The position numbers and the translations under genes are program-made. From positions 1-64,000 of the IMG/VR virus record IMGVR_UViG_3300033984_000473: a stretch of DNA of 64,000 nt; one strand, given 5' to 3'. The notes beneath the pieces were generated by a model. It ran no database searches, was not told the DNA's origin, and saw only the letters and a program-made list of their open reading frames with translations. Shown in pieces: positions 12,235 to 61,663 of the stretch. How positions within the stretch are numbered: position 1 is the stretch's first letter; each line of letters opens with the position of its first letter.

Positions 12235-12262
12235 AATATCCTAGCGTTTGCGTTAGGATATT
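12235..12262 (+). terminator. Stem-loop after gmd; its 3' arm contains the ATATTTAT promoter motif of phoH
   Basis: AATATCCTAGCG-TTTG-CGTTAGGATATT inverted repeat. Confidence 0.5.
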
Positions 12263-12266
12263 TATA
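12257..12266 (+). promoter_or_regulatory. Putative phage late promoter (GATATTTATA)
   Basis: Motif recurs on the sense strand upstream of about 20 genes in the window. Confidence 0.6.
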
Positions 12267-12290
12267 TTTATAATAAAACCTATTAAGCCT

Positions 12291-13148
12291 ATGCCTAGAA
12301 AAGTTTCAACCACGACAAAAACTCCAGCTGTAAGAACACCTAGAGTTAAGAAAGAAACTACGGCTGCCACATCGCAGCAAAAACCAAGTGTTGATTTATT
12401 ATCCTTGATTAAAATCGACCTAAAGCATAAAAACGAAGTACAAAAAAAATTGACACAAGCCATTAAAACTGGTGATGTAACAATTTGTACGGGACCAGCT
12501 GGAACTGGTAAAACACTTCTTAGTGTTGCCGAAGCTTTGCTACTTTTGAAAGCTCATCCAGACAAATATCATGAAATAAAATTAGTAAAATCTATTGTTC
12601 AACTTAAAGACGAAGATTTAGGAACGTTGCCTGGTGATGAAAAAGATAAATTGAAATTTATCATGATGTCATTCTTTGATGCTTTCTATAAATTAATCGG
12701 TGAAGAAACAACAAACAGATTACTAGATGCTGGCTATATCAAAATGGAAGTATTTGGTTCTATTCGTGGTAGGTCTTTATCTAACTGTATTATTTTATTT
12801 GATGAGTTCCAAAACGTTACCGATAACAATGGTAAAACACTTTTAACTAGGTTTTCTGAAAATACTAAAGTTATCGCTTTGGGTGATAGCAACCAAGTAG
12901 ATTTAAAAACACCAGAAAGTAGTTGTTTATTTGAGTTGGTTCGTATGGCTAAGTTACACCCAGAAGAAGGTGTAAATGTTGTCGAATTTACTGAAGATGA
13001 AGTTGTTAGACATAGACTTACAAAATACTTTATTCAAATCTTTGAACATAAAGACTACAAGAAAAAACCAAATATCGATAGGGTTAAAAAAATAGAACCG
13101 ATTATCAAAAAATCTTTTTTTACTAGATTTTTAGAATTATTTAGCTAA
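12291..13148 (+). CDS. phoH: PhoH-like ATPase
   Basis: GPAGTGKT, LGTLPG, RGRSL, DEFQN, LGDSNQVDL, VVRH. Confidence 0.93.
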   Translation: MPRKVSTTTKTPAVRTPRVKKETTAATSQQKPSVDLLSLIKIDLKHKNEVQKKLTQAIKTGDVTICTGPAGTGKTLLSVAEALLLLKAHPDKYHEIKLVKSIVQLKDEDLGTLPGDEKDKLKFIMMSFFDAFYKLIGEETTNRLLDAGYIKMEVFGSIRGRSLSNCIILFDEFQNVTDNNGKTLLTRFSENTKVIALGDSNQVDLKTPESSCLFELVRMAKLHPEEGVNVVEFTEDEVVRHRLTKYFIQIFEHKDYKKKPNIDRVKKIEPIIKKSFFTRFLELFS

Positions 13149-13198
13149 AAATCTAATTTTTACTTTACTTATTCGAAATTAATCGTTAGATTGGTGTC

Positions 13199-13801
13199 AT
13201 GAAAATAGGAATAAGTATTAACGAGGTTTTACGAGATTTTATTGGTCAATTGGCTTACACTTACGATAAATATATCGGGGAAACTGATATCACTGAAGGA
13301 GATGTAACCAATTTTAATTTAATTGAGTTCTTTAAGTTTGATGACATCAACAAACTTAACACGTTTCTTTATTTAGAAGCCCCTCTAGAGATTTTCGGCC
13401 ATGCCGACCAGATGTCAGATGGTTTGATGAACCATTTCAATAACTTCATCATGGATATGAATGACGATGGCGACCACGAGATTGAACTTGTAAGTCGTGA
13501 AATCGATAAAAGCATCCCATCAACTTACTTCTTTTTATCTAAAACTAGTTGCAGAATCGATAAGGTTAGATTCGTCAAACAATACCCACAAGAATGGGAT
13601 GGTGTTGACGTACTTATTACTGCCAACCCTTTTGCTTTAGAAAACAAACCTTCTGGTAAAATTAGTGTTAAGGTAAAAGCATCTTACAATACTGATACAC
13701 CAGCTGATTATGAAATTGACTCTATACTAGATTTCATTAACGATGAAGAATTAAGAACTAGAATATTAACAACAACCATAACAACTTACGAAGAAATTTA
13801 A
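13199..13801 (+). CDS. HAD/5'(3')-deoxyribonucleotidase-like protein with a degenerate motif I
   Basis: MKIGISINEVLRDF (cf. GIDIDGVL.D), C-terminal YN; first Asp absent. Confidence 0.5.
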   Translation: MKIGISINEVLRDFIGQLAYTYDKYIGETDITEGDVTNFNLIEFFKFDDINKLNTFLYLEAPLEIFGHADQMSDGLMNHFNNFIMDMNDDGDHEIELVSREIDKSIPSTYFFLSKTSCRIDKVRFVKQYPQEWDGVDVLITANPFALENKPSGKISVKVKASYNTDTPADYEIDSILDFINDEELRTRILTTTITTYEEI

Positions 13802-13806
13802 AAATT

Positions 13807-14166
13807 ATGATAGCATTCGGTGGAACAGTCTATGTATTAGACATGGACAAATTAACAAAAGCTGTATCAAGTGATGATACAAATGCATCTTCAGAAACTG
13901 TTGATACTGTAACTAAGGTTTACTTAGATGCCAATGGTGCCGAAAGTGCAAGTGAAGTTTTAAGCACTGTACGTGAAAGAGGTAGAGAAATTGACAGTAT
14001 AAAATATGATTTAATGCGAACACTAATTGAAGTCTTATTAGATGGAAATGAAGAAGCGGATGAATCGTTAGGTGTTGACAGAGCTTTAGACTCTGCTCCG
14101 CTATCATTTAAAATAGCCTTTAATACTTTACTTCAGTATGGTATTTTAAAAGAAATAGAAGAATAA
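13807..14166 (+). CDS. Hypothetical protein
   Basis: 119-aa ORF in operon. Confidence 0.7.
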   Translation: MIAFGGTVYVLDMDKLTKAVSSDDTNASSETVDTVTKVYLDANGAESASEVLSTVRERGREIDSIKYDLMRTLIEVLLDGNEEADESLGVDRALDSAPLSFKIAFNTLLQYGILKEIEE

Positions 14167-14189
14167 TAACCCAAAAACAAAAAAACAAA

Positions 14190-15338: not shown

Positions 15339-15349
15339 AAAAACACAAA

Positions 15350-16147: not shown

Positions 16148-16876
16148 ATGATTGCTAAACGAGGACGAAAAAGAACAAATGATATGTATTTTGGTCCAGA
16201 AGAAGAAGAAGCAGTTGTAAAATTCTTAGAATCAGAAAATGAAACTGAAAGAAACTTAATCTTTAATGAGTGGCTCAAAGCCCCCTTAGATAAGATGATA
16301 GAATCGATAATCAGACGATATAAATTATATAGAAAGGGTGAAACTTTTGAAGAACTTCATGGTGACACCGTTTCTTTTCTGATGACAAAGGTACATAAAT
16401 TTGAAACTGGTCGAGGCAAAAAAGCCTATTCCTATTTCGGAACAATAGCAAAAAATTATATTCTAGGTCTTTTAATTAAAGATGAAAAATACATGAAGCA
16501 AACAGCCTGTTATGAGGATATGGCTCAAAGTATTGAAGAACGTGATGACCTAGTATATGTTATTGATGGTGATGGTTTTATGATGGAAGAATTCATTAAA
16601 AAATTATCAGATGGTATCAAAGAAGAATTAAACGATGAAAATCATATCCCTAAAAAACGATTAAATGATAATGAGAAAAAAGTAGGTTTTGCTTTGATTG
16701 AAATTTTAGAAAATTGGGAAACAGCATTCGAATCTATGGATGGTGGTTCAAAATATAATAAGAACTCTGTCTTAGAAACCATGCGTAATTACACTAACTT
16801 ATCAACTAAAGATATTAGATTAGCCATGAAACGTTATAAAGAGCTATATGAGCTTTTAAAACAACATGGATTATAG
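16148..16876 (+). CDS. T4 gp55-like late-transcription sigma factor
   Basis: Sigma region-2-like LDKMIESIIRRY…KVHKFETGRGKKAYSYFGTIAKNY; next to structural genes. Confidence 0.72.
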   Translation: MIAKRGRKRTNDMYFGPEEEEAVVKFLESENETERNLIFNEWLKAPLDKMIESIIRRYKLYRKGETFEELHGDTVSFLMTKVHKFETGRGKKAYSYFGTIAKNYILGLLIKDEKYMKQTACYEDMAQSIEERDDLVYVIDGDGFMMEEFIKKLSDGIKEELNDENHIPKKRLNDNEKKVGFALIEILENWETAFESMDGGSKYNKNSVLETMRNYTNLSTKDIRLAMKRYKELYELLKQHGL

Positions 16877-16903
16877 AAAAATTGTAATAAAACCTTATCA
16901 ATA

Positions 16904-16942: not shown

Positions 16943-17332
16943 ATGCCAAGAAAAAGAAAACAAGACGTAAAAGTAAACAATACAGAATCCTTAGAAGGAC
17001 TTATGCAAGAAACTTATAATGATGCATGTTTACAAATAAATGATGCTCAAAAAGTTATTAATGAATTATCTACTGGTGTTACACCAGTGGACGTGGACGA
17101 ACATACTAAGATTGCCAAAGAAAAAGGTGGTCTTTTAAAAATTAAAGATTCTGCTATTAGACTTAAATTAGAGTTAGCTAAACTTCAAAGCGATATTATT
17201 AAAAGCCGTGGAGATGTTGAAACTGCTATTACTCAAAGAAGTAACGGTTCAGCTTCTCTTAGTGATTTTAAATCAATTAGAGAAATGTTAAAAAACGATA
17301 AGCAAAACGGGATAGAAAGCGAAGAAGAATAA
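16943..17332 (+). CDS. Hypothetical coiled-coil protein
   Basis: 129-aa helical ORF. Confidence 0.7.
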   Translation: MPRKRKQDVKVNNTESLEGLMQETYNDACLQINDAQKVINELSTGVTPVDVDEHTKIAKEKGGLLKIKDSAIRLKLELAKLQSDIIKSRGDVETAITQRSNGSASLSDFKSIREMLKNDKQNGIESEEE

Positions 17333-20498: not shown

Positions 20499-21893
20499 AT
20501 GGTAGTACGCACATATTTCGACAAGAACAACACAATCGTTAGTAACCTAAACGTCAATACTGGTTTAAACCCAGTAACTGAATTGTTTTATGGTGGAGCT
20601 ATCGGTCAACAACAATATAGCAGATTTCTATTTCATTTCGATGAAACTAGATTAAAAGCAATGTATAATGATGGTACCTTTACTGATTTAAGTAAACTTA
20701 AACACACACTTAGACTTACAAATACTGGTTCTTTTGACAAAGAACTTTTAAACACAAATATGGGTTCAAAAGAAAGAACTACTTCATTTGATTTGATAGC
20801 TTTTAAAATACAACAACCATGGGACAATGGTGTTGGTTATGATTACGAAATACCAATATTAGCCTACGGTGATGCTGCATTTAGTAATGGAGTCTCTAAC
20901 TGGGTAAACGCTCAAACAGGTATTGAATGGGCTAACGGTACTGGAACATATTCTGGTTCACCATCTGGTATTACAGTGTCAACACAACATTTTGACAAAG
21001 GAAATGAAAACATTGAAATGGATATCACAGATTATGTAAATGGTGTTATTACTGGAAACACAAATAATGGTTTAGGTATTGCATATGCTAGACCATTTGA
21101 ACAAATGAATACTACAAGTCTTCAATATGTTGGGTTCTTTACAAACAATACACAAACCTTCTACGAACCATTTGTTGAAACAATTTATTCTAACCACATT
21201 ACAGACGATAGAAACAACTTTTTCCTAGATAAAGCTAACAAGTTATACCTATACGTTAATCTTGCTGGAAACCCTACTAATTTGGATTTTATACCTAGTG
21301 TAGATGTTTATGACGCTAGTGGTAATATGTTTATGACTTATTCGCCATCACAAGTTAACCATGTAACAAAAGGTGTTTACTCAATCGATATCCTTGTACC
21401 AACTTCTGGAAATGAAGGTGTTATGTACAATGACGTATGGACAAACATTAGTATCAACGGTGTAATTAGACCAGATATTTCCATGGATTTTGTAACGAAA
21501 GACTCCATGGGTTATTATGATTTAAGTAACGGTGATTCATTACCTAAAAAAGTTGCTGTATCAATATCTGGATTACAAAATAAAGAAAGAATTAAACGTG
21601 GTGATATTCGTAAGGTTTTGGTTTCGGCTAGAATACCTTATACTATTGAGCAATCGCAAGCAATTAGTGGTATAAAATATAGAATTTATGTTTCGGAAGG
21701 TTCTAGTGAATTAACTGTAGTTGATTTCCAACCAGTTGAAATGGCAATTAATAACTACTATTTCTTATTGGATACTGCTAGTCTTGTACCAAATACTTAT
21801 TATTTAGACGTATTGGTTACCTCTAACCTAGAAGTGACAACAATAAAAAGAGCGATTCAATTTGATATCGTAAACCAAGTAGAACTAAGATAA
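20499..21893 (+). CDS. Putative virion structural protein (beta-rich)
   Basis: Asn/Thr/Gly-rich, YSRFLFHFD…WDNGVG…IEMDITDYV pattern; late motif upstream. Confidence 0.6.
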   Translation: MVVRTYFDKNNTIVSNLNVNTGLNPVTELFYGGAIGQQQYSRFLFHFDETRLKAMYNDGTFTDLSKLKHTLRLTNTGSFDKELLNTNMGSKERTTSFDLIAFKIQQPWDNGVGYDYEIPILAYGDAAFSNGVSNWVNAQTGIEWANGTGTYSGSPSGITVSTQHFDKGNENIEMDITDYVNGVITGNTNNGLGIAYARPFEQMNTTSLQYVGFFTNNTQTFYEPFVETIYSNHITDDRNNFFLDKANKLYLYVNLAGNPTNLDFIPSVDVYDASGNMFMTYSPSQVNHVTKGVYSIDILVPTSGNEGVMYNDVWTNISINGVIRPDISMDFVTKDSMGYYDLSNGDSLPKKVAVSISGLQNKERIKRGDIRKVLVSARIPYTIEQSQAISGIKYRIYVSEGSSELTVVDFQPVEMAINNYYFLLDTASLVPNTYYLDVLVTSNLEVTTIKRAIQFDIVNQVELR

Positions 21894-22253: not shown

Positions 22254-22285
22254 TTGACAAATAAAGTATTTGTCGTATATTTATA
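22254..22285 (+). promoter_or_regulatory. Promoter for the 22391 gene (TTG-N19-TATATTTA; also contains TATATTTATA)
   Basis: TTG 22254-56 and TATATTTA 22276-83, Bacteroidota-type spacing. Confidence 0.55.
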
Positions 22286-24469: not shown

Positions 24470-25009
24470 CTATAATTGTATTTGAGTGAAATCGGAATCA
24501 TAAAACGGTATATTCCCTAATTTTTCTTTAAATGTAGAAAAAAAATCTGGTTCACTTATTTTAAAATCTTCTATTGTTCCACTTGCTGGTGTAAATCTAA
24601 TCCCCAGTAAATATTTAGATATTGGTTCTAATGTACCAATAAAAAATTCTTCACTTTCATTGTAATCACTTCTACTAGTATCCGCTTTTGTTTTGCTTCC
24701 AAATTGAGCAAAATAATCATGTGGTACTAATCTTTTACCAAAATCACGTTTTATCGCATCGCCATCTAGTATTAATTGTATATCACTAAAAATTAAATTA
24801 ACGTTTCTAGTTAGAGAAACACCATTATAATCTTTACTCTCACCATTAAATTTTGTTAATATTTTTTGGGTTGTTTTAGGTTCTATTTTATTATCACTAA
24901 TAATCTTTAATACTCTATCGATAAAAGTACTATGGTATAATATATTTTTACCCTTAAATGGTGATTTTAAAATTGATTCTCTAAGTAACTTTTGTATAAA
25001 TTCTTTCAT
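24470..25009 (-). CDS. Putative ADP-ribosyltransferase-fold protein with N-terminal LLRE peptide
   Basis: LYHST…GVSLTR…ESEE (H-S-ExE arrangement of ART folds); starts MKEFIQKLLRES. Confidence 0.55.
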   Translation of the reverse strand: MKEFIQKLLRESILKSPFKGKNILYHSTFIDRVLKIISDNKIEPKTTQKILTKFNGESKDYNGVSLTRNVNLIFSDIQLILDGDAIKRDFGKRLVPHDYFAQFGSKTKADTSRSDYNESEEFFIGTLEPISKYLLGIRFTPASGTIEDFKISEPDFFSTFKEKLGNIPFYDSDFTQIQL

Positions 25010-25012
25010 AAC

Positions 25013-25022
25013 TATAAATATC
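25013..25022 (-). promoter_or_regulatory. Putative late promoter GATATTTATA, 3 nt before the ATG
   Basis: Minus strand reads GATATTTATA-GTT-ATG. Confidence 0.55.
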
Positions 25023-25031
25023 CATATAAAT

Positions 25032-25061
25032 AAAAAAGGCCACCGTATGGTAGCCTTTTTT
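25032..25061 (-). terminator. Intrinsic terminator after the major capsid gene
   Basis: Minus strand AAAAAAGGCTACC-ATAC-GGTGGCCTTTTTT. Confidence 0.8.
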
Positions 25062-25079
25062 AATTTATAAAGATTATGA

Positions 25080-26921: not shown

Positions 26922-26955
26922 AATTTGTTTGTTTTATTTTTTGGGTTATTTTATT

Positions 26956-28170
26956 TTATCTTTTTTCAACTCTGTTCATCAAATCAATGATTCTTTTTGT
27001 TGAAGGGTCAACATATGCTGTACTTTCGTTTAATTGTTTTGAAGTACTAGTAGATGCTTCTTTAATAATTTTACGTTCTACTGATTCGTTAATTGGTTTT
27101 CTTGAATCCAATTCGTTAGTAATAGTTTTGTAAAGTTTTTTTGATTCTACAAGGTTAGAAACTTCTCCATCAAATCTTTTGATGATATTTTGTTTCTCAG
27201 CTTTTGTAGTTGAATGCTCAGTTAATAATCTAGTTACATAAGTAAGATTACTATTGAACACTACAGTTTCAACTAATTTGCTTCTAAATTCTCTAAGAGC
27301 AGTTCTGAACTCGTCATTTTCAGCTTTTAGTTTAGTTGCTTCAGTTAGTAAACTGTTATATTTTTTAGTTGTTTCAGAAACTAATTTTTTTGCTGCGATA
27401 GATTCAGTTTTGATTTTACCAGCACCGCCAGTATTTGTCAAATCAGAATAAGATTTTCCATTTTGAGCTAAACCGATAACTAATTTTTCGTCTAGTTCTT
27501 CAACTTCTTCTTCTTCACCTTCTTCTTCACCTTCTTCTTCATCACCAACAGGTACTAAGTCATCTGGAATATCACTTCCTTCTTCTTCGTCATCCATTTC
27601 GATTTCATATTCCACATCGTCTTCTGCACCTTCTTCATCTTCCATACCCATATCGGCCATGTCTAAATCTAAATCCTCAGCTCCCGCTTCTGGTGTATTA
27701 CCATCTAATTTTACAACGTACTCACCTGGTTCTGAGATGTTCAAGTGAATTTCGTCACCCACGATTTCGATTTCGTCTTCGCCACTTAATTTTTTGTAGA
27801 TTGCGATTACGTCATCATCAGATGCTGCGGTCATATCCATTTCTTCTCCACCTAACGTATCAACGTCCATTCCCATTTCTGGTTCCATTTCTGGTCCCAC
27901 TTCTTCAGAGTCTTCCATGTCGCCTAAGCCACCTTCGATTGAATCATCTTCAGTACCTTCTTCATCAGACATTGTATCCAAGTCTAATTCTTCTGGTGCC
28001 TCTAAGTCTTCTTCTTCATAAATCTCTTTAACTAGAGATTCTTTCACTACACTATCAATTTCTTCTTTAGCTACGCTACGAAGTATTTCTTTTGTGTTAG
28101 CATTAAGAGCACTTTGAATATTTTTGATATCCAATAATGCTTCTTCAAGTATTGATTTGTTTTCTGCCAT
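26956..28170 (-). CDS. Prohead core/scaffolding protein (gp22-like role)
   Basis: Very acidic centre, coiled-coil C-terminus, many L/I-x-E sites; between protease and capsid genes. Confidence 0.8.
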   Translation of the reverse strand: MAENKSILEEALLDIKNIQSALNANTKEILRSVAKEEIDSVVKESLVKEIYEEEDLEAPEELDLDTMSDEEGTEDDSIEGGLGDMEDSEEVGPEMEPEMGMDVDTLGGEEMDMTAASDDDVIAIYKKLSGEDEIEIVGDEIHLNISEPGEYVVKLDGNTPEAGAEDLDLDMADMGMEDEEGAEDDVEYEIEMDDEEEGSDIPDDLVPVGDEEEGEEEGEEEEVEELDEKLVIGLAQNGKSYSDLTNTGGAGKIKTESIAAKKLVSETTKKYNSLLTEATKLKAENDEFRTALREFRSKLVETVVFNSNLTYVTRLLTEHSTTKAEKQNIIKRFDGEVSNLVESKKLYKTITNELDSRKPINESVERKIIKEASTSTSKQLNESTAYVDPSTKRIIDLMNRVEKR

Positions 28171-28240
28171 TTTAGTTTTTTGTTTTTTGTATTTATTTAT
28201 TTTATTTCAATTAAATAAACAATGAGATATACTCATTTGT

Positions 28241-28251
28241 TAATAAATATG
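28241..28251 (-). promoter_or_regulatory. Putative late promoter (CATATTTATTA) for scaffold-capsid
   Basis: Recurring motif in the intergenic region upstream of 28170. Confidence 0.55.
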
Positions 28252-29045: not shown

Positions 29046-29055
29046 TATAAATATC
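29046..29055 (-). promoter_or_regulatory. Putative late promoter GATATTTATA
   Basis: 18 nt upstream of the protease ATG. Confidence 0.6.
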
Positions 29056-29065: not shown

Positions 29066-29097
29066 AAAAAAACCCCCAATATCACTATCGAGGGTTT
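29066..29097 (-). terminator. Intrinsic terminator
   Basis: Minus strand AAACCCTCGATA-GTGA-TATTGGGGG followed by a T run. Confidence 0.65.
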
Positions 29098-30973: not shown

Positions 30974-31019
30974 ATGTTTTTATTTATTAATAAATATTAT
31001 AATTTACTCGAAAAAATCA

Positions 31020-35145: not shown

Positions 35146-35155
35146 TATAAATATG
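35146..35155 (-). promoter_or_regulatory. Putative late promoter CATATTTATA
   Basis: 12 nt upstream of the terminase ATG. Confidence 0.6.
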
Positions 35156-35186: not shown

Positions 35187-35213
35187 GATAAAGGCCCCAA
35201 ACGGAGCCTTTAT
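35187..35213 (-). terminator. Intrinsic terminator
   Basis: Minus strand AATAAAGGCTCCG-TT-TGGGGCCTTTAT. Confidence 0.7.
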
Positions 35214-40592: not shown

Positions 40593-40602
40593 TATAAATA
40601 TC
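40593..40602 (-). promoter_or_regulatory. Putative late promoter GATATTTATA
   Basis: 30 nt upstream of ATG 40562. Confidence 0.6.
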
Positions 40603-40907: not shown

Positions 40908-40932
40908 AAAAAAAAGTACCAATTGGTACTTT
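40908..40932 (-). terminator. Intrinsic terminator
   Basis: Minus strand AAAGTACC-AATT-GGTACTTTTTTTT. Confidence 0.75.
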
Positions 40933-45637: not shown

Positions 45638-45668
45638 CAAAGATACGAATATTTATCTTTAGATGCAA
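45638..45668 (-). promoter_or_regulatory. Bacteroidota-type promoter TTG-N20-TATCTTTG (leftward, toward thyA)
   Basis: Plus strand CAAAGATA 45638-45, CAA 45666-68. Confidence 0.7.
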
Positions 45669-45669: not shown

Positions 45670-45700
45670 TTGCATTTATAATAATTTTTTAGTACCTTTG
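45670..45700 (+). promoter_or_regulatory. Bacteroidota-type promoter TTG-N20-TACCTTTG (rightward, clpC)
   Basis: TTG 45670-72, TACCTTTG 45693-700; back-to-back with the leftward promoter. Confidence 0.7.
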
Positions 45701-45727
45701 CTAAAGAAATATAAACCTACAAAAAAT

Positions 45728-48263: not shown

Positions 48264-48275
48264 ATATTTATCAAT

Positions 48276-49489: not shown

Positions 49490-50026
49490 TTAATTAATAT
49501 CTCTATTCCAAGTATATTCATCACTAACTTTAGCAAATCTACTATCTTTTTCATAATCAATCCTACCAAGTTTAGGGTCAAAATACCCAACCAAATCAGC
49601 GTATAGATATATTTTATATTTATTTGTATCTTCGTTATATATAGTACCTAATGCTGGGTTTGAATCGATAAATGTTTTAAAATCATTTTTGTTTACCAAC
49701 CTAACACTGCTAAAACCATTTGATTCTTCTCTTATTGTTCCTTGATTAGCTAATTGAAATTCAAAATCATTCGCATGGAATCTTCTAGTTCCAAACTCAA
49801 CGACCCATTCACCACTACTTTCTCTACCGATATATTCACCTTTCATATTTGGCGTAACCATCTCACCTGTATTATCATCAATTTTTCTAGCATCTCCGAC
49901 CCAAACAATTTCATCACCTCTTTTTGCTTCCAAGTTTTCGGTAATAATCCCTTTAGATTCTAAGTATCTTTGTTCAGCCAATATGTTAGTCTTAGCTATA
50001 TTTAATTTTTTATCTGATTTTCTCAT
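49490..50026 (-). CDS. Hypothetical protein with N-terminal ILAE/YLES/ITEN sites
   Basis: GATATTTATA at 50040-50049 upstream. Confidence 0.65.
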   Translation of the reverse strand: MRKSDKKLNIAKTNILAEQRYLESKGIITENLEAKRGDEIVWVGDARKIDDNTGEMVTPNMKGEYIGRESSGEWVVEFGTRRFHANDFEFQLANQGTIREESNGFSSVRLVNKNDFKTFIDSNPALGTIYNEDTNKYKIYLYADLVGYFDPKLGRIDYEKDSRFAKVSDEYTWNRDIN

Positions 50027-50065
50027 AGTGTATTTTTAATATAAATATCTTAGGTTTTTTAAAAG

Positions 50066-51215: not shown

Positions 51216-51422
51216 TTACTTTTTACCTTCAGTTAATTGTTGGAATTTAGCCTCTAACGCAGCAATTTTACCTTCTAAAACAGCAGTTTTATTGTTGGTT
51301 TTTTTAGCTTGTTCGTTAATCCATTCTTGTTTTTTCACAGCAACTGCTTCATTTACAATATTGTCGATTAAATCAACTAAATGGTTTTCTTTAATTTTAA
51401 CTGTTTTTTTTACGTTTGACAT
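51216..51422 (-). CDS. Small protein made mostly of head-targeting-like peptide plus coiled coil
   Basis: VKIKENHLVDLIDNIVNEA…INEQ…VLEG…LTEG; late motif at ~51457. Confidence 0.65.
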   Translation of the reverse strand: MSNVKKTVKIKENHLVDLIDNIVNEAVAVKKQEWINEQAKKTNNKTAVLEGKIAALEAKFQQLTEGKK

Positions 51423-51490: not shown

Positions 51491-51646
51491 TTATCTAACA
51501 AAAATATCTACATTGAATATTTTTAATAGGTCAATTAACGTTAAATTTTTTAAAGTTGCAAAATTTTTAGCAGCTCCATGTAAATCATTAGCTGAAGTGG
51601 TGTTTATAACTTCACCTTTTTTTGTTTTTAATGCGAATTTTATCAT
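51491..51646 (-). CDS. 51-aa ORF not in the track (MIKFALKTKKGEVINTTSANDLHGAAKNFATLKNLTLIDLLKIFNVDIFVR)
   Basis: ATG 51646 to TAA 51491; ATATTTATT motif just upstream. Confidence 0.55.
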   Translation of the reverse strand: MIKFALKTKKGEVINTTSANDLHGAAKNFATLKNLTLIDLLKIFNVDIFVR

Positions 51647-53764: not shown

Positions 53765-54106
53765 TTAGATTAAAAATTTGCTAAAATAATCGTCTTCTAT
53801 ATATTCTTCGATTCTTCTCTTTAAAAACCATATCAACCCATCTACTTCATCTATCTCTCTTTCGATGATATCTAGTATCACTTTGCTTGGGTCTTCACCA
53901 TCGGTTAATCGATATTTAATCTCCTTGAAATACTCCCCCTTATTTTGACTCATCAATTGTTGAATCACTAAATTATACGTTTCCCATCTGTTTTCTTTTT
54001 CTTCATCTAGTGTTTCTAAGATACAAATAACGTGTTTGTTATATGCTTTGTCCAAGGTAGTTCTTTTACTTCTTCCAGCTTTTAATAAAAAATTTTTAGC
54101 TTCCAT
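53765..54106 (-). CDS. Hypothetical protein (paralog of 54220-54540)
   Basis: WETYNLVIQQL…EIKYRLTDGEDPSKVILDII. Confidence 0.7.
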   Translation of the reverse strand: MEAKNFLLKAGRSKRTTLDKAYNKHVICILETLDEEKENRWETYNLVIQQLMSQNKGEYFKEIKYRLTDGEDPSKVILDIIEREIDEVDGLIWFLKRRIEEYIEDDYFSKFLI

Positions 54107-54964: not shown

Positions 54965-55291
54965 TTATAAACTATCGATAATAGCTTGTAATTCAGTTTG
55001 GCTCTTAGCACCAGCACTTCTTTTACCTACAATTTCTTCACCATCTTTAAAGAAGATAACTGTTGGAATCCCTCTAACATTATACTTTTGTGCTAGCTCT
55101 TGGTTTCCTTCACCATCAACATTCACTTTTCCAATTGTGATACCCTTATTTTTTTCGTCCACTGATAGAGCCTCAATTACTGGGCCTAACATTTTGCATG
55201 GGCCACACCACGGTGCCCAAAAATCTAAAACAGTTATGTTTTTTTGTTTGAAAACATCTTGTACGTTTTCTTTTGTTACTTCTAATGCCAT
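54965..55291 (-). CDS. trxA: Thioredoxin
   Basis: DFWAPWCGPCK, KVNVD, RGIPT. Confidence 0.95.
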   Translation of the reverse strand: MALEVTKENVQDVFKQKNITVLDFWAPWCGPCKMLGPVIEALSVDEKNKGITIGKVNVDGEGNQELAQKYNVRGIPTVIFFKDGEEIVGKRSAGAKSQTELQAIIDSL

Positions 55292-55350
55292 TTACTTAAA
55301 TTTTATTTTTTGTTATAGTTATAAATATATTAAATCAAATACAAAAATCA

Positions 55351-55913: not shown

Positions 55914-55973
55914 TTATTATACAAATATACGATTTATTATTCAATTATAAAATATTTATAGTAAATATCTTTT

Positions 55974-56219
55974 ATGTTAGACGAAAAAGACGAAGAAATG
56001 ATTCTAAAGTTCATTCAACGAAATTATCCAGTTGCCAGAATAAAACACAATATGCGTTTTAGACGTGCTATTGTTATCGATGGTAAAACACCACACATAC
56101 TTAGTGATGCAAAATCTACTCTACCAATCAAAATAGAGCTAAGTAACATCATCAAAAAGATATTTGATTGCAACTATATTACAGCTGAAAAACTTATCAC
56201 CAAAGCCCTTAATATCTAA
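55974..56219 (+). CDS. Hypothetical protein
   Basis: 81-aa ORF; AATATTTATA at 55951-60. Confidence 0.6.
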   Translation: MLDEKDEEMILKFIQRNYPVARIKHNMRFRRAIVIDGKTPHILSDAKSTLPIKIELSNIIKKIFDCNYITAEKLITKALNI

Positions 56220-56880: not shown

Positions 56881-57348
56881 TTACAATCCAAAAACAATCA
56901 ACATCATATCATCTACGATTAAATTGCCTTGGTCATCGCTAAGTAGTTGAACCTCAAGTGTATCGTCAATAGTTATGATACCTTCACCAGTACGAGTCTC
57001 AACCTTAAGTCTATCCCAATCCAATTTTAAGTCTAGAGTAGCGGTATCTGTGTTGTCCTCGTTAACAAAATAATCAACTTCAATTTCGATATCAGTCGGC
57101 CCAGCAATGTTATAAAGAGAAATCCCTCTAACACCCCATTGTTTAGCGTCTAGTTCAATTTCAAATGCTACTGTAATCTTATGTGTTATTACGTCATTTA
57201 TCTCATGACCTTTTAATTTTGCATTTCTATAAGTAAAATCAACTCCAATTTCTCTCTGATAGGAATTGCTTCCAGATTTATCTTTAGAACCTTCGGTTAA
57301 CTTACCTTTAAGTCGTTCAAGTTGTGCTTCAGTTATTTTTAATTTCAT
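56881..57348 (-). CDS. Hypothetical protein with N-terminal LKITEAQL peptide
   Basis: MKLKITEAQLERLKGKLTEG; GATATTTATA at 57361-70. Confidence 0.7.
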   Translation of the reverse strand: MKLKITEAQLERLKGKLTEGSKDKSGSNSYQREIGVDFTYRNAKLKGHEINDVITHKITVAFEIELDAKQWGVRGISLYNIAGPTDIEIEVDYFVNEDNTDTATLDLKLDWDRLKVETRTGEGIITIDDTLEVQLLSDDQGNLIVDDMMLIVFGL

Positions 57349-57405
57349 AATCTTTTTTATTATAAATATCATTGATTATTAATAAAATTTGTAGTATATT
57401 TAAAC

Positions 57406-57858
57406 ATGGCAAATTTAGAATTTAATAGCGATTTGAAATTAGGTAATGATGGTGAAAAAACTATCATAGATTTCTTGGAATCCAAAGGTAGCAAATACAT
57501 TAGTTCAAACAATGATAATCAATATGATATCAAAATGTTAAAGAACGGGAAAGTAATAACTTATGAAATTAAAACCGATGTAACATGTGCACCACTATTT
57601 GATACTGGGAACATTTTTATCGAATTCAAATCCAGAGGAAAACAATCTGGGATTACAGTAACCAAAGCTGATTGGTTCGTAACATATTTCAAATACCTAA
57701 ACGAAGTTTGGTTTATCAAAAGTGAAAACTTAAAACAACTTATACTCGATAATGAATTCAGAGTCTTTATGGATGCTGGAGATATCGGAAGTGAAACTCA
57801 TGGCTACTTGATAAAACGAAAAGATTTTAAAGAACATTTCCATACCTATAAACTATAA
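57406..57858 (+). CDS. PD-(D/E)xK nuclease-like protein
   Basis: GE…YDIKM…YEIKTD…TGNIFIEF.SRGK.SGI..TKADW. Confidence 0.72.
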   Translation: MANLEFNSDLKLGNDGEKTIIDFLESKGSKYISSNNDNQYDIKMLKNGKVITYEIKTDVTCAPLFDTGNIFIEFKSRGKQSGITVTKADWFVTYFKYLNEVWFIKSENLKQLILDNEFRVFMDAGDIGSETHGYLIKRKDFKEHFHTYKL

Positions 57859-57879
57859 TATTTATCAATAAAACAAATT

Positions 57880-58512
57880 ATGTCAGTAAAACCAAAACAA
57901 CCAAAATTATCTGTGGAATTAATACCATCAACCTGTCACTTCTCAAATGTTAGAACAACTGTTAAGTCATCAGAATGGGACAAGATTCGTTTCATCTCAT
58001 ACGAAGCTGCCGATAATAAATGTGAAATATGTAAAGACACAGGTAAAGCCCAAGGATATAAACATAACGTAGAGTGCCACGAAATCTGGGATTATGATGA
58101 TGAAAAACACGAACAAAAACTTGTTGGTCTGATTTCTTTGTGTCCAACATGTCACCAAGTTAAACATATCGGTAGAGCAATCGCCATCGGAAAACAATCA
58201 GCATGCTTCCTTCAATTAGCAAAGGTAAATAAATGGACACCTAAACAAGTACAAGAACACGTTATAGCTTCTTTTGAGCTCCATAAAGAACGTTCTAGAT
58301 ACAAGTGGACACTTGACCTATCTCTACTTACAAAAGAACCTTACAACATAAAATTAAAGGATACGAAAGAACGAATTTTCGAGGTAAAAAAATACAAAAA
58401 GAAACCCAAGAAGAAAGCTACAACTGGTGTGAAAAAAGTTCACCCTAAAGCCAAGCTGGCAGCGGTTCTTAAACCAAAAGAACCAAAAAATAAAAGACCA
58501 CCAAAAAAATAA
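57880..58512 (+). CDS. HNH-type (Cys-rich) nuclease-like protein with basic tail
   Basis: CEIC…VECHEIW…LISLCPTCHQVKH. Confidence 0.75.
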   Translation: MSVKPKQPKLSVELIPSTCHFSNVRTTVKSSEWDKIRFISYEAADNKCEICKDTGKAQGYKHNVECHEIWDYDDEKHEQKLVGLISLCPTCHQVKHIGRAIAIGKQSACFLQLAKVNKWTPKQVQEHVIASFELHKERSRYKWTLDLSLLTKEPYNIKLKDTKERIFEVKKYKKKPKKKATTGVKKVHPKAKLAAVLKPKEPKNKRPPKK

Positions 58513-58566
58513 TCTTAACTTAACACTATTGTTGAATTTTCCTATATTTATATGGAAAAAAGATAA

Positions 58567-58890
58567 GTGAATATAGTACATGTAAAACCTAATGGCCAAG
58601 ACATCGAAACTTGGATTGCCTTGCTAGAAGGTGAAGTTGTTGGTCACATTTTTATGAAAATTGAAAGTAACGATAAAATTAAATTTTTAGACGCATGGGT
58701 GCATGATGAACATAGACGAAAAGGTATCTATCGAAATCTATGGGAAACCAGATGGGAATATGTAAACCAAAACTATAAAGGACATACAATATATGCGTGG
58801 TGTAAAAACTCTAGCCTACCTTTGCTACTGGAAAAAGGGTTTATTGAAGGTGAAATATGTACCTATGTAGAAATTAAGATACATGAATAA
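58567..58890 (+). CDS. GNAT acetyltransferase
   Basis: AWVHDEHRRKGIY, SLPLLLEKGF; GTG start. Confidence 0.8.
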   Translation: MNIVHVKPNGQDIETWIALLEGEVVGHIFMKIESNDKIKFLDAWVHDEHRRKGIYRNLWETRWEYVNQNYKGHTIYAWCKNSSLPLLLEKGFIEGEICTYVEIKIHE

Positions 58891-58912
58891 AAAAAGACCC
58901 ATACGGGTCTTT
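58889..58912. terminator. Terminator between convergent genes
   Basis: AAAAAAAGACCC-ATAC-GGGTCTTT. Confidence 0.75.
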
Positions 58913-60109: not shown

Positions 60110-60114
60110 AATGA

Positions 60115-61053
60115 TTAACGTCTACGTGATGAACTTCTTGAGCTAGACCCAAATGAACGACTCCCAGAACTTCTAGAACTTGACCCAAATGAACTACGAC
60201 TTCTACTTGAACTGCTAGCAGAACTAGATGAATTTCTAGAGCGTGAACCAAACCCACTTGTAGTTGGTCTAGAACGGTTGGCCGATGTACTGGTAAATGC
60301 TTTTTGTGAACGAGTAGGTGCAGCCATGCTTTTTGACCTTGCCGATACCGCACTCGATACTTTGTTGGCGTTAGGACTACTAATCCTAGAAGATGTTTGT
60401 GATGGTCTAGTTGTTCTTGTTATTGTACTGGTTCTTGTAGTGGTAGATACTCTAGAACGGTAAGAGTTCATCGGTACACTTCTATAAGAATGGTAAGACC
60501 TAGGGTAATATCCGTAATGATAAGGACTGTAGTATGGTCTGTGATATGTGAATAAATAATTCATAATCATCAAATCCCCTAAGCTGTAATGTGATTGGTA
60601 ATTGTTGTTGCTACCATAAAGTTGTTGATTACCTTGAATGTTCATTTGAGCACCACCTTCACCTCTTGCGATTTGAATAGTTGCAACCTCTTGAGTTTCA
60701 TTGTTAGGTAAATCTACAGTAAAAGAAAATCCTTTGTCATTTCCTTCACCATATTCAGTCACTTTGATATAGTCTACACTACCATCTCCGTTTAAATCTA
60801 AATTGTTGATTGAACCATCGGAATTCAATTTGCTCTCAATCTCTTGAGCTGTTCGTGATGTTTTAACCAACTCACCCAATCCTTGTAAATCTAAATTGTC
60901 ACCGATAGACGTACTAGTCGGAGTTACACTAATTGTAGAGGGTGCTGGGTCATTCACATAAACCTGTGAATCATTGTAACGATTATCATTTTGAGATTGG
61001 CGACAGCTAACCAAGGTAAAGATTAAACCTAATGTTAATAGAAAATTTTTCAT
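60115..61053 (-). CDS. Lipoprotein with EF-hand-like DLNGDGSVD loop and Ser/Arg-rich tail
   Basis: Lipobox FTLVSC; NNLDLNGDGSVDYIKV; C-terminal SRSSFGSSSRSS…RRR. Confidence 0.78.
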   Translation of the reverse strand: MKNFLLTLGLIFTLVSCRQSQNDNRYNDSQVYVNDPAPSTISVTPTSTSIGDNLDLQGLGELVKTSRTAQEIESKLNSDGSINNLDLNGDGSVDYIKVTEYGEGNDKGFSFTVDLPNNETQEVATIQIARGEGGAQMNIQGNQQLYGSNNNYQSHYSLGDLMIMNYLFTYHRPYYSPYHYGYYPRSYHSYRSVPMNSYRSRVSTTTRTSTITRTTRPSQTSSRISSPNANKVSSAVSARSKSMAAPTRSQKAFTSTSANRSRPTTSGFGSRSRNSSSSASSSSRSRSSFGSSSRSSGSRSFGSSSRSSSRRR

Positions 61054-61085
61054 GTTGTTAATTTAAAGTTAATACTATTGAAGTA

Positions 61086-61117
61086 CAAAGGTATGTATAA
61101 TAAATGACATTTCCAAA
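61086..61117 (-). promoter_or_regulatory. Bacteroidota-type promoter TTTG-N20-TACCTTTG
   Basis: Plus strand CAAAGGTA 61086-93, CAAA 61114-17. Confidence 0.75.
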
Positions 61118-61134
61118 TTTATTTATCTTTTTAT

Positions 61135-61590
61135 TTAAAGTCGATTAATATTATCAATATCAAGCCATTCTCTTTGATGCAGATTTTGTCTATCCAATAG
61201 TTTTTTGGCATCGTTGATTTCTTTTTGCTCTTTAATCCTTTTCATCAACGCATCCATATCAGCCGTGGGTGCAACCGTTACCTTGTACCTATCCGTTCTC
61301 TCACCAGTTTCCGAGTGCCATCCAATTTGACATGACTCACACTGATAATAACCATCAACACCATTGGCCTCAACATCACCATCAGATAACTCAATAAAGT
61401 TTAAGTTGCTTATCTTTACAGGATTATCTTCAGTCCAATCATGATGCTCTTTCGCATATTTTATAGCTTGCTCCCTAGTTCTATAGTCACCAGTCAACGT
61501 ATCAATCAAATCAGCTTTGAACCAATCGTGACCACATTCTGGACATTTATCGCAATGGTTTTTGTCGGTAATCTTATAAATTTCTGTCAT
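61135..61590 (-). CDS. Hypothetical Zn-binding protein
   Basis: CPECGHDW…YQCESC; ATG 61590. Confidence 0.65.
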   Translation of the reverse strand: MTEIYKITDKNHCDKCPECGHDWFKADLIDTLTGDYRTREQAIKYAKEHHDWTEDNPVKISNLNFIELSDGDVEANGVDGYYQCESCQIGWHSETGERTDRYKVTVAPTADMDALMKRIKEQKEINDAKKLLDRQNLHQREWLDIDNINRL

Positions 61591-61606
61591 ATTTAATGTT
61601 TTTATA

Positions 61607-61637
61607 CAAAGATACGAAGCTTTAATCAAAAGTCAAA
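61607..61637 (-). promoter_or_regulatory. Bacteroidota-type promoter TTTG-N19-TATCTTTG
   Basis: Plus strand CAAAGATA 61607-14, CAAA 61634-37; abuts a divergent AATATTTATA motif (61637-46). Confidence 0.72.
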
Positions 61638-61663
61638 ATATTTATATAAAAATCTTATAACAA

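What the first reader, a model, noticed from the sequence alone, without database searches (positions are those of the whole stretch)
12257..61646. Phage-specific late promoter ATATTTAT(A), the reverse complement of the T4 late box
Seen: (G/C/A)ATATTTAT(A/T/C), or a one-mismatch variant, lies on the sense strand upstream of about 20 genes on both strands (e.g. 12257, 16904, 20477, 25013, 28241, 29046, 30988, 35146, 40593, 40888, 48263, 50040, 51457, 54136, 54897, 55320, 55951, 57361, 57857, 61637), including scaffold/capsid, protease and terminase. It often sits right after a terminator. Known: T4 gp55 reads TATAAATA on the sense strand. Here the sense strand shows TATTTATA, which also resembles the host -7 box TAnnTTTG. 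Inference: it is the target of the gp55-like sigma at 16148.
Basis: partly seen in the sequence, partly recalled or inferred. Interest (0 to 1): 0.65.

Follow-up and report, generated by a model that had tools for sequence, protein, structure and literature searches.

The report
Late promoter of T4-related jumbo phage
An 8-base box, ATATTTAT (core TATTTATA), precedes the head, packaging and homing-endonuclease genes of this freshwater jumbo phage and is most likely its late promoter, a two-base variant of the phage T4 late box read by a distant relative of the T4 late sigma factor gp55.

Summary
ATATTTAT occurs 32 times in the window against 14 expected. It occurs 76 times in the 233-kb genome, and half of those lie 4-45 nt before an ORF start, against 13% for composition-matched 8-mers. 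The full element is TTTT-N13-ATATTTAT(A/T)-N3-AAA. Its box is identical in all 170 distinct orthologous upstream regions from related metagenomic phages, although the flanks and the distance to ATG vary.

It is a separate class from about 145 host-type Bacteroidota promoters (TTG-N20-TAnnTTTG), which are densest in another part of the genome.

The same box precedes terminase, portal, sheath and tube genes in Flavobacterium phage immuto and in Microcystis phage Mel-JY01. Those hosts belong to different phyla. Both phages encode one homologue of the 16148 protein and no other detectable sigma factor. The best structural match of that protein among 48,161 PDB chains is T4 gp55 (Z 11.0).

The "reverse complement" framing misleads. 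In the same orientation TATTTATA matches TATAAATA at 6 of 8 positions and keeps the two adenines that gp55 buries in deep pockets.

Transcription starts, late timing and sigma dependence were not measured. This is a new variant of a known kind.

The parts
16148..16876 (+). Gene for the 242-aa diverged sigma-70-family protein, proposed reader of the box. It has a gp55-like sigma-2 domain (residues about 13-113) and a possible sigma-4-like C-terminal domain (about 141-242).
   Evidence: Pfam Sigma70_r2 scores 23.9-25.9 bits against a cut-off of 24. hhalign against a gp55-family alignment gives P 83.8%, E 8e-6. AlphaFold2 (AF2) model pLDDT 91. Top structural hit is 7d7d_F, T4 gp55, Z 11.0. C-terminal domain: sigma28 region 4, Z 5.8.
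12258..12271 (+). Two overlapping boxes (ATATTTATATTTAT), 19-25 nt before the PhoH-like gene 12291-13148.
   Evidence: 16.0 bits
16905..16913 (+). Variant G-TATTTATA, 29 nt before gene 16943-17332. No T-run. Weak candidate.
   Evidence: PWM under 10 bits
20478..20485 (+). Box 13 nt before gene 20499-21893 (464 aa, unknown function).
   Evidence: 22.0 bits
25014..25021 (-). Box directly after the terminator that follows the major capsid gene. The ATG of gene 24470-25009 lies at box position 12, which looks leaderless.
   Evidence: (23.1 bits)
25031..25062 (-). Terminator hairpin ending the scaffold-like/major capsid unit. Its T-tract doubles as the T-run of the box at 25014.
   Evidence: RNA contigs stop near 25.0 kb.
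28243..28250 (-). Box 72 nt before the 404-aa scaffold-like gene (26956-28170), which is followed by the T4-type major capsid gene (25080-26921).
   Evidence: 20.8 bits. Exact in 36/36 orthologous regions. Metatranscriptome contigs cover 25.0-28.2 kb and fall off beyond.
29047..29054 (-). Box 19 nt before the prohead protease gene 28302-29027.
   Evidence: 20.8 bits. Exact in 53/53 orthologous regions.
29070..29097 (-). Terminator hairpin whose T-tract is the T-run of the protease box.
30990..30997 (-). Box 16 nt before gene 30206-30973 (255 aa). The T-run directly follows the portal stop codon, with no hairpin.
   Evidence: 22.5 bits; 52/52 exact
35147..35154 (-). Box 13 nt before the large terminase gene (ATG 35133), heading terminase, an 84-aa ORF and portal (31020-33050).
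   Evidence: 24.2 bits; 29/29 exact
35188..35213 (-). Terminator hairpin upstream of the terminase box. It is separate from that box's T-run.
40594..40601 (-). Box 31 nt before gene 39744-40562 (272 aa).
   Evidence: 21.5 bits
40890..40897 (-). Box 16 nt before an 83-aa gene (ATG 40873), directly after hairpin 40913-40932.
   Evidence: (24.3 bits)
45649..45656 (+). Box upstream of the 843-aa ATP-dependent protease-like gene (45698-48229). A host-type promoter at 45693 also precedes this gene.
   Evidence: (15.5 bits)
48264..48271 (+). Box after a terminator. The ATG at 48276 lies at box position 12, which looks leaderless.
   Evidence: (19.9 bits)
50041..50048 (-). Box 14 nt before gene 49490-50026.
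   Evidence: 22.6 bits
51459..51466 (-). Box 36 nt before gene 51216-51422.
   Evidence: 22.7 bits
51663..51670 (-). Box 16 nt before small gene 51491-51646.
   Evidence: 17.5 bits
54138..54145 (-). Box 31 nt before gene 53765-54106.
   Evidence: 19.1 bits
54898..54905 (-). Box after a terminator. The ATG at 54893 lies at box position 12, which looks leaderless.
   Evidence: (21.5 bits)
55321..55328 (-). Box 29 nt before gene 54965-55291. It is the only recognisable promoter at this divergent junction.
   Evidence: (21.3 bits)
55952..55959 (+). Box 14 nt before gene 55974-56219, in a 60-bp divergent gap. The opposite gene has a host-type promoter.
   Evidence: (18.2 bits)
57362..57369 (-). Box 13 nt before gene 56881-57348. 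It is the only promoter candidate at this divergent junction.
   Evidence: (23.8 bits)
57858..57865 (+). Box 14 nt before an HNH homing-endonuclease gene, 57880-58512.
   Evidence: (16.8 bits)
58544..58551 (+). Box 15 nt before ORF 58567-58890, which has a GTG start.
   Evidence: 20.3 bits
61638..61645 (+). Box 18 nt before gene 61664-63307 (547 aa, nucleotidyltransferase-like), inside a 34-bp divergent gap.
   Evidence: (20.7 bits)

Best explanation
ATATTTAT (core TATTTATA) is the -10-like element of the late promoters of this T4-related jumbo phage. The phage most likely infects a Bacteroidota host.

Proposed mechanism. Host core RNA polymerase, carrying the phage's own gp55-like sigma (the 16148 gene), melts the box and starts at the conserved A 4 nt downstream (box position 12 +/- 1). 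A T-run 13 nt upstream is an accessory element specific to this clade. These promoters head the units for terminase and portal, prohead protease, scaffold-like protein and major capsid protein, many unknown genes that may be virion proteins, and self-contained homing-endonuclease cassettes. Each unit is often insulated by a terminator whose T-tract doubles as the T-run. About 145 host-type promoters (TTG-N20-TAnnTTTG) presumably serve the early genes.

What is shown: enrichment, orientation, position, conservation, separation from the host-type class, co-occurrence of box and sigma homologue across host phyla, and fold similarity to gp55.

What is inferred: the start site, late timing, which sigma reads the box, and the role of the T-run.
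For: 1. Statistics: as given in the observation check.

2. Architecture. The element is TTTT (positions -17..-14), then N13, then ATATTTAT, then A/T, then N3, then A (42/44), A, A. The downstream A keeps its distance from the box, not from the ATG. The gap from box to ATG ranges from 4 to 72 nt. It equals 4 at four sites, which puts the ATG exactly at position 12, and is never 5-11. That pattern fits a start at position 12, giving either a leaderless mRNA or a leader of at least 8 nt.

3. Phylogenetic footprint. The box is exact in 53/53, 52/52, 36/36 and 29/29 distinct orthologous upstream regions whose flanks have diverged.

4. Nine gene heads at divergent junctions have this box as their only promoter candidate.

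5. Gene content. Downstream genes include terminase, protease, the scaffold-like/capsid unit and at least six homing endonucleases. Ten genes driven by host-type promoters gave NAMPT, a nucleotidyltransferase and a polymerase, and no structural hit. Host-type sites number 62 in 70-110 kb, where there is no late box. In 20-30 kb there are 0 host-type sites and 4 late boxes.

6. The same box precedes terminase, portal, sheath, tube and baseplate-hub genes in Flavobacterium phage immuto. It also precedes terminase, tube and other genes in Microcystis phage Mel-JY01.

7. Both of those complete genomes lack any Pfam sigma-70 region 2 hit. Each has one full-length homologue of the 16148 protein (E 2e-36 and 5e-31). 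No phage RNA polymerase was found in any of the three genomes.

8. The 16148 protein resembles gp55: hhalign P 83.8%, E 8e-6, and top structural hit 7d7d_F, Z 11.0, rmsd 2.5 A over 96 residues.

9. gp55 buries A-12 and A-8 in deep pockets and A-9 in a shallow one (PMC7892883). TATTTATA keeps the first two adenines. Tyr96 of the 16148 protein aligns with gp55 Tyr97, which stacks on A-12.

10. Contigs from four freshwater metatranscriptomes cover 25.0-28.2 kb at depth 10-870. The conserved protease gene next door shows depth 1-7.
Against: - No transcription start, time course or binding data exist. The metatranscriptome contigs cannot resolve 5' ends, and the leader at 28170-28222 was skipped as a repeat.
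- Homology to gp55 is remote. BLASTP finds nothing. The PDB profile search gives SigA E 0.004 and gp55 E 0.086. Foldseek E-values are all at least 0.1. Other sigma-2 domains score within 1-2 Z units of gp55.
- The box also precedes PhoH-like, ClpB/Lon-like and small unknown genes, so 'late' rests on analogy.
- The genome carries a second, complete sigma factor.
- In this fragment the 16148 gene has no recognisable host-type promoter within 16 kb upstream and lies downstream of the box at 12258. How it is first expressed is unknown, because the contig starts inside that operon.
- No gp45-type clamp was detected, so the T4 activation mechanism cannot be assumed. gp33 was not searched for.
- The 10-kb bin counts of the two promoter classes are not significantly anticorrelated genome-wide (Spearman -0.15, p 0.5).
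Confidence: 0.72

Rival explanations
1. The box is read by the phage's other sigma factor, the complete RpoS/RpoD-like 294-aa protein at 118.4-119.3 kb (regions 1.2, 2 and 4). The T-run would be its -35 element.
For: This protein is a confident, full-length sigma: Pfam region 2 at 59 bits, region 4 at 43 bits, and an RpoS model at 204 bits. A host-type promoter precedes it, as expected for an early gene that redirects transcription. The late element is bipartite in this clade.
Against: Immuto and Mel-JY01 show the same box before late genes but have no Pfam sigma-70 region 2 hit anywhere in their complete genomes. The box does not resemble TATAAT. E. coli-type promoter matches are not enriched in the structural region (70 found against 86.5 expected). 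The T-run is 13-14 bp from the box, shorter than the usual 17 bp.
Confidence: 0.07
2. The box is a weak variant of the host sigma-A -7 element. Host holoenzyme reads it, perhaps with a phage activator, and no phage sigma is involved.
For: If the start is at position 12, the box occupies -12..-5, the same span as the F. johnsoniae -7 element (PMC6847099). The T-run then falls near -28, where that paper reports an AT-rich host motif. TATTTATA shares T, A, T and T with TAnnTTTG.
Against: The G and one T that are nearly invariant in the host element are absent at every site. The -33 TTG, strong in the phage's 145 host-type promoters, is absent too. The same box is used by a Microcystis phage, whose cyanobacterial host is not expected to share the Bacteroidota consensus (the host's promoter preference is general knowledge, not tested here). 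The core is far more invariant than the host-type boxes (46/51 exact).
Confidence: 0.08
3. The box acts at the RNA level, as an AU-rich processing site or a translation-enhancing leader element, and is not a promoter.
For: It is AU-rich, sense-oriented and close to start codons. Bacteroidota lack Shine-Dalgarno sequences and use A-rich leaders (PMC6847099).
Against: The distance to the ATG varies from 4 to 72 nt, while the downstream A keeps its distance from the box. Many sites lie directly after terminators or in divergent gaps of 34-60 bp, where no upstream transcript on that strand is expected. In Mel-JY01 a separate GGAG-type ribosome site lies between the box and the ATG.
Confidence: 0.04
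4. The box is a promoter read by another phage factor, not by the 16148 protein. Candidates are an unrecognised, highly diverged phage RNA polymerase or a DNA-binding activator.
For: The link between sigma and box is by co-occurrence only. Most genes of these phages have unknown function. The genome record is only about 64% complete.
Against: No T7-like or multisubunit polymerase domains were found in three genomes, two of them complete. A diverged sigma with a gp55-like DNA-melting domain is present and highly conserved, with more than 7,700 homologues, the listed best hits 82-95% identical.
Confidence: 0.09

Closest known systems
Phage T4 late promoters (TATAAATA at -13..-6) read by gp55, with co-activator gp33 and sliding clamp gp45
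   Same: Both use a simple, tightly conserved 8-bp AT-rich -10-like box a few bases before the start, on either strand. Both place it upstream of head, packaging and homing-endonuclease genes. Six of the 8 bases are identical in the same orientation, including the two adenines gp55 buries in deep pockets. The phage encodes a small, diverged sigma whose sigma-2 domain is closest in fold to gp55. The phage also has T4-type capsid, portal, terminase and protease genes.
   Different: Bases 4-5 are TT instead of AA. The inferred start is about 2 nt closer to the box. This clade has a conserved upstream T-run, which T4 lacks. The sigma is 242 aa against 185, with an extra C-terminal helical domain that weakly resembles sigma region 4, and no evident clamp-binding tail. 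No gp45-type clamp was detected by Pfam models in this fragment or in two complete relatives; gp33 was not searched for.
In-silico late promoter variants of other T4-related phages (KVP40, 44RR, S-PM2; Aeh1 with a/gC at -13/-12), reviewed in PMC2988020
   Same: A lineage-specific variant of the late box inferred from upstream-region alignment, together with a gp55 homologue.
   Different: Those variants change the first two bases or none. Here the central AA changes to TT, and the sigma is too diverged for BLAST to find gp55. No paper in the searched library links ATATTTAT or TATTTATA to a phage promoter.
Bacteroidota housekeeping promoter (-33 TTTG / -7 TAnnTTTG, sigma-ABfr)
   Same: Possibly the same span relative to the start (-12..-5), and an AT/T-rich tract near -28. 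The phage uses about 145 true copies of this host promoter for other genes.
   Different: The late box lacks the host element's G and one T, and lacks the -33 TTG. It also occurs unchanged in a cyanobacterial phage.
Two-domain sigma factors with bipartite promoters and a long -10 element (sigma28/FliA; ECF sigmas)
   Same: A compact sigma-2 plus sigma-4 layout is suggested by full-length structural alignments and by region-4 hits for the C-terminal domain. The element combines a 4-bp upstream part with an 8-bp downstream box.
   Different: Region-4 similarity is weak (Z no more than 5.8). The T-run is absent in immuto, so it is not a defining part of the promoter.

Membership tests
T4-type late transcription system (gp55 / late box) | Promoter-specificity factor homologous to gp55 (a diverged sigma-70 region 2 domain) | tested here: met
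   hhalign of the family alignment against a gp55-family alignment gives P 83.8%, E 7.9e-6 over 117 columns. The top hit among 48,161 PDB representatives is 7d7d_F (gp55), Z 11.0, rmsd 2.5 A, 96 residues. The homology is remote: BLASTP finds nothing, and other sigma-2 domains score Z 8-10.
T4-type late transcription system (gp55 / late box) | Consensus TATAAATA on the non-template strand at about -13..-6 | tested here: not met
   The consensus here is (A/C)TATTTAT(A). It matches at 6 of 8 positions, with TT replacing AA at bases 4-5. The position relative to the start is inferred only, at roughly -11..-4 to -13..-6.
T4-type late transcription system (gp55 / late box) | No conserved -35-like element | tested here: inconclusive
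   A T-run at positions -17..-14 is conserved in this genome and its close relatives but not in immuto.
T4-type late transcription system (gp55 / late box) | gp45 sliding clamp and gp33 co-activator present, and a clamp-binding tail on the sigma | tested here: not met
   PF09116 finds nothing in G000 (about 64% complete), immuto or Mel-JY01. PF02916 finds nothing in G000 or immuto and was not run on Mel-JY01. gp33 was not searched for. The sigma's C-terminus shows no conserved hydrophobic tail (consensus). Diverged clamps could escape these models.
T4-type late transcription system (gp55 / late box) | Late, replication-coupled timing | not testable with these tools
   Gene content is the only evidence: terminase, protease, the scaffold-like/capsid unit and homing endonucleases. 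Metatranscriptome contigs carry no time axis.
Sigma-70 family | Region 2 (core binding and -10 recognition) | tested here: met
   Pfam PF04542 scores 23.9 bits in hmmscan and 25.9 bits in the genome search, against a cut-off of 24. Structural hits to many sigma-2 domains score Z 8-11.
Sigma-70 family | Region 4 (helix-turn-helix, -35 recognition) | tested here: inconclusive
   The C-terminal domain model has pLDDT 82. Its top hit is sigma28 region 4 (Z 5.8). About ten region-4 domains appear among the top 50, all under Z 6, which is within the noise range for helical domains. There is no Pfam region 4 hit.
Bacteroidota sigma-A promoter | -7 element TAnnTTTG together with -33 TTG about 19-20 bp upstream | tested here: not met
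   The late sites have A where the host element has G, and they show no TTG at the host spacing. The phage's true host-type class shows both features.

The most novel reading that the evidence does not exclude
The 16148-type protein represents a large, previously uncharacterised sigma family (over 7,700 metagenomic homologues) that sits between ordinary two-domain sigma factors and T4 gp55. It would combine a gp55-like melting domain with a retained sigma-4-like domain and work without a sliding clamp. It would impose one promoter, TATTTATA, on the core RNA polymerases of hosts as distant as Bacteroidota and Cyanobacteria. That would make it a portable late-gene switch and a view of how clamp-dependent T4 late transcription evolved.
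Probability: 0.3. Interest if true: 0.7.

Novelty: new variant of a known kind. Interest (0 to 1): 0.57.

Why it matters
This gives a concrete, testable late-promoter consensus and a candidate sigma for a very abundant group of T4-related freshwater phages that has no cultured member. Two cultured relatives are available for experiments: Flavobacterium phage immuto and Microcystis phage Mel-JY01.

The box, together with the host-type promoter class, allows transcription units and likely temporal classes to be annotated in hundreds of metagenomic genomes. It also supports assigning a Bacteroidota host.

The same box and sigma family occur in phages of two bacterial phyla. That shows the specificity travels with the phage, which is useful for understanding how gp55-type late transcription evolved and possibly as an orthogonal expression switch.

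Tried and rejected
- DNA search of the phage collection with 8 kb of the window found nothing. Relatives were reached only through proteins.
- PHROGs gave no hit for the 16148 protein. phmmer against the PDB gave only noise.
- Iterating the position weight matrix drifted into the host-type class. I went back to a matrix built from exact sites only.
- I first aligned the box to the host element as nATATTTA against TAnnTTTG. That would put the start at position 11. The conserved A's at 12-14 and the four ATGs at position 12 do not favour it.
- E. coli-type TTGACA-N16-18-TAnnnT sites, tried as a possible third class for the RpoS-like sigma: 26 found against 11-22 in simulations, not convincing. 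The consensus scan was not enriched either.
- Metatranscriptome contigs fitted the unit boundaries but cannot show 5' ends. The leader region was skipped as repetitive.
- The 'terminator-coupled promoter' idea accounts for only a minority of sites.
- tRNA and Rfam scans of the window found nothing, so the box at 22277 has no known RNA gene downstream.
- Complex prediction was not used, because the host RNA polymerase is unknown.

Full report
WHAT THE WINDOW IS

The window is the first 64 kb of a single 232,931-bp viral contig with 33% G+C. CheckV rates the record about 64% complete. The sample is a lake-water metagenome, and close relatives occur in many freshwater, river and wastewater runs.

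The window encodes a T4-type major capsid protein, portal, large terminase and prohead protease. The nearest named phages by protein are Flavobacterium phage vB_FspM_immuto, Microcystis phage Mel-JY01 and Rhodothermus phage RM378.

THE OBSERVATION

ATATTTAT occurs 32 times in the window, against 14.3 +/- 3.9 in shuffles. The 20th, 16904, is G-TATTTATA.

Genome-wide, 39 of 76 copies are followed within 3-45 nt by an ATG that opens a long ORF. The reverse complement gives 11 of 76 (p = 2e-6). Composition-matched A3T5 8-mers average 13% +/- 9%.

An unbiased ranking of all 8-mers by 'followed by an ORF start' recovers the motif.

The aligned sites show a longer element:
- TTTT at positions -17..-14
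- 13 bp of spacer
- ATATTTAT
- A or T
- 3 bp
- A (42 of 44 sites), then A, then A

A matrix built from these sites finds 51 genome sites at 14 bits or more, against 2.1 in simulated genomes. Forty-six of the 51 carry the exact core.

A SECOND, LARGER PROMOTER CLASS

The same 8-mer ranking put TACCTTTG/TATATTTG words even higher. Aligned, they give TTG-N20-TAnnTTTG(TA). This is the Bacteroidota housekeeping promoter, -33 TTTG / -7 TAnnTTTG (PMC2483708; PMC6847099).

There are 145 such sites at 14 bits or more, against 0 expected. They are densest at 60-120 kb, in front of small genes. Late boxes lie at 10-64 kb and 160-230 kb. In 70-110 kb there are 62 host-type sites and no late box. In 20-30 kb there are none of the former and four of the latter.

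Over the whole genome the 10-kb bin counts are not significantly anticorrelated, because both classes mix at 160-230 kb.

The late sites lack the -33 TTG and the terminal G. The two classes are therefore distinct, and the host is very probably a member of the Bacteroidota.

WHY THE BOX IS A PROMOTER

First, position. The distance from box to ATG ranges from 4 to 72 nt, while the downstream A stays fixed relative to the box.

Second, obligatory promoter sites. At 16 divergent gene junctions, nine gene heads have this box as their only recognisable promoter. Some of those gaps are only 34-60 bp.

Third, terminators. Several boxes lie directly after terminator hairpins: 25031-25062, 29070-29097 and 40913-40932.

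Fourth, conservation. In 80 related IMG/VR loci the box is exact in 53/53 (protease), 52/52 (255-aa gene), 36/36 (scaffold-like gene) and 29/29 (terminase) distinct upstream sequences. The surrounding intergenic sequence has diverged.

Fifth, the gap distribution. The gap equals 4 at four sites, which puts the ATG exactly at box position 12. It is never 5-11, and it is 12 or more elsewhere. A start at position 12 would produce this pattern, giving either a leaderless mRNA or a leader of at least 8 nt.

Sixth, RNA. Contigs from four freshwater metatranscriptomes cover 25.0-28.2 kb (scaffold-like and capsid genes) at depth 10-870. They fall to about 1-7 over the well-conserved protease gene and to 0 below 25.0 kb. 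This fits a unit running from the box at 28243 to the terminator at 25031-25062. Contigs cannot show 5' ends, and the leader was skipped as a repeat.

WHY 'LATE'

Boxes head these units:
- terminase, an 84-aa ORF, then portal
- prohead protease
- scaffold-like protein, then major capsid protein
- several unknown genes in the head module
- at least six HNH or GIY-YIG homing-endonuclease genes; T4 is also known to express some of its homing-endonuclease genes late (general knowledge, not checked here)

Ten genes driven by host-type promoters gave NAMPT, a nucleotidyltransferase, a polymerase and unknowns, with no structural hit. The box also precedes PhoH-like and ClpB/Lon-like genes. Late timing is an inference from gene content only.

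WHICH FACTOR READS IT

The 242-aa product of 16148-16876 reaches Pfam Sigma70_r2 at the threshold. It has more than 7,700 metagenomic homologues (the listed best hits are 82-95% identical), on contigs up to about 360 kb.

Its family profile aligns to a gp55-family profile with P 83.8%, E 8e-6. A confident model (pLDDT 91) has T4 gp55 in the clamp-dependent activation complex as its best match among 48,161 PDB representatives. That match is 7d7d_F, Z 11.0, rmsd 2.5 A over 96 residues. Many other sigma-2 domains follow at Z 8-10.

The C-terminal 100 residues, modelled alone (pLDDT 82), hit sigma region-4 domains repeatedly, but at Z no higher than 5.8. That is suggestive only.

The genome also holds a complete RpoS/RpoD-like sigma of 294 aa at 118.4-119.3 kb, behind a host-type promoter.

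The comparative test separates the two sigmas:
- Immuto (160 kb, complete, Flavobacterium host) carries (A/C)TATTTAT(A) before terminase, portal, PhoH, virion protein, sheath, tube and baseplate-hub genes.
- Mel-JY01 (190 kb, complete, Microcystis host) carries ATATTTAT(A/G) before terminase, the gene after it, tube and others. TATTTAT is the most frequent 7-mer in its upstream regions, present in 9 of 22.
- Neither genome has any Pfam sigma-70 region 2 hit.
- Each has exactly one full-length homologue of the 16148 protein, with E 2e-36 and 5e-31.
- In both, no TATTTAT lies within 1.5 kb upstream of that gene.
- None of the three genomes shows a T7-like or multisubunit RNA polymerase.

The box therefore travels with this sigma family across two host phyla. 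That argues against the RpoS-like sigma and against a host sigma-A variant.

RELATION TO THE T4 LATE BOX

T4 late promoters are TATAAATA at -13..-6 (PMC2988020). gp55 inserts A-12 and A-8 into deep pockets and A-9 into a shallow one (PMC7892883).

In the same orientation TATTTATA matches TATAAATA at 6 of 8 bases. It keeps the adenines at box positions 2 and 6, the ones that go into the deep pockets. It changes positions 4 and 5 to T.

In the profile alignment Tyr96 of the 16148 protein lies opposite gp55 Tyr97, which stacks on A-12. gp55 His95, part of the A-9 pocket, lies opposite a Tyr.

The inferred start, about 3-5 nt after the box, is slightly closer than in T4. It resembles the host's -7 element geometry of -12..-5.

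THE T-RUN

The T-run is conserved in this genome and its close relatives even where no hairpin precedes it, as at the terminase, 255-aa and scaffold-like genes. It is not conserved in immuto. It is therefore a clade-specific accessory.

Three roles are possible, and none was tested:
- contact by the putative sigma-4-like domain
- the generic AT-rich tract near -28 seen in Flavobacterium promoters
- a shared terminator/promoter T-tract

No gp45-type clamp was detected. Clamp-dependent activation as in T4 cannot be assumed.

VERDICT

It is corrected on three points: the orientation argument, the host-box resemblance and the overlooked second sigma.

No paper in the searched library links this box to a phage promoter.

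I rate it a new variant of a known kind: a T4-type late promoter and gp55-type sigma. Interest is moderate to good, because the family is very abundant, spans two host phyla and is experimentally tractable in two cultured phages.

Unresolved: the exact start site, timing, direct sigma dependence, the T-run's role, and how the sigma gene itself is first transcribed. In this fragment there is no host-type promoter within 16 kb upstream, and the contig begins inside that operon.

Noticed in passing
window 38421(-), 40614(-), 45638(-), 45693(+), 53731(-), 55922(-), 56833(-), 61086(-), 61607(-); genome-wide 145 sites, densest at 60-120 kb: Host-type Bacteroidota promoters, TTG-N20-TAnnTTTG. Many have a long conserved downstream extension (TACCTTTGTACTCTAATCA, about 30-50 copies). 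They point to a Bacteroidota host and an early gene class. The purpose of the conserved extension after the -7 box is unexplained.
   Followed up: partly
G000 118,387-119,271 (-) = L011:979-1863:-: A phage-encoded complete sigma factor (294 aa, regions 1.2, 2 and 4; best models RpoS/RpoD). A host-type TACCTTTG promoter precedes it. Its target promoters are unknown, and no third motif class was found.
   Followed up: partly
G000 about 119,340-119,783 (-) = L011:1932-2375:-: A phage-encoded SmpB homologue, the tmRNA-binding protein (Pfam 178 bits), lies next to the RpoS-like sigma gene.
   Followed up: no
window 41387-43666 (-): A 759-aa thymidylate synthase whose two halves (residues 1-211 and 601-758) are separated by about 340 residues. 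The insert matches unrelated phage families. It looks like an intein or an inserted endonuclease domain.
   Followed up: no
G000 167537, 182089, 184272, 211611 (all -): A repeated 45-bp module, GTACCTTTGTATAACTTTTAAGAATAAGAGTATATTTATAAACAAAC. It places a host-type -7 box 22 nt upstream of a late box with the correct T-run. This looks like tandem early and late promoters for the same genes.
   Followed up: no
window 57880-58512; G000 141 kb, 181 kb, 198 kb, 210 kb: At least six HNH or GIY-YIG homing-endonuclease genes each carry their own late box. Two (near 181 kb and 208.7 kb) lie directly after what look like tRNA 3' ends (no tRNA scan was run there).
   Followed up: partly
window 22254-22284 (+): This ATATTTAT copy has no T-run and no downstream A's. 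It forms a near-perfect E. coli-type promoter, TTGACA-N16-TATATT, 106 nt before gene 22391. No tRNA or Rfam RNA lies in between.
   Followed up: partly
window 25001-28200: Relatives of this phage are strongly represented in four independent freshwater metatranscriptomes, mainly over the capsid and scaffold-like genes. This suggests active infections in the environment.
   Followed up: partly
window 40586/40594, 61638/61646; G000 212957/212966, 218061/218073: Weak opposite-strand matrix hits lie next to true boxes. They are by-products of the AT-rich, partly palindromic sequence after the box (ATATTTATATAAAAAT) and are not separate promoters.
   Followed up: yes
window 1-12250 (+): A 12-kb run of about 16 tightly packed plus-strand genes has neither promoter class. 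The operon, which continues to the sigma gene, must start beyond the contig's first base.
   Followed up: no
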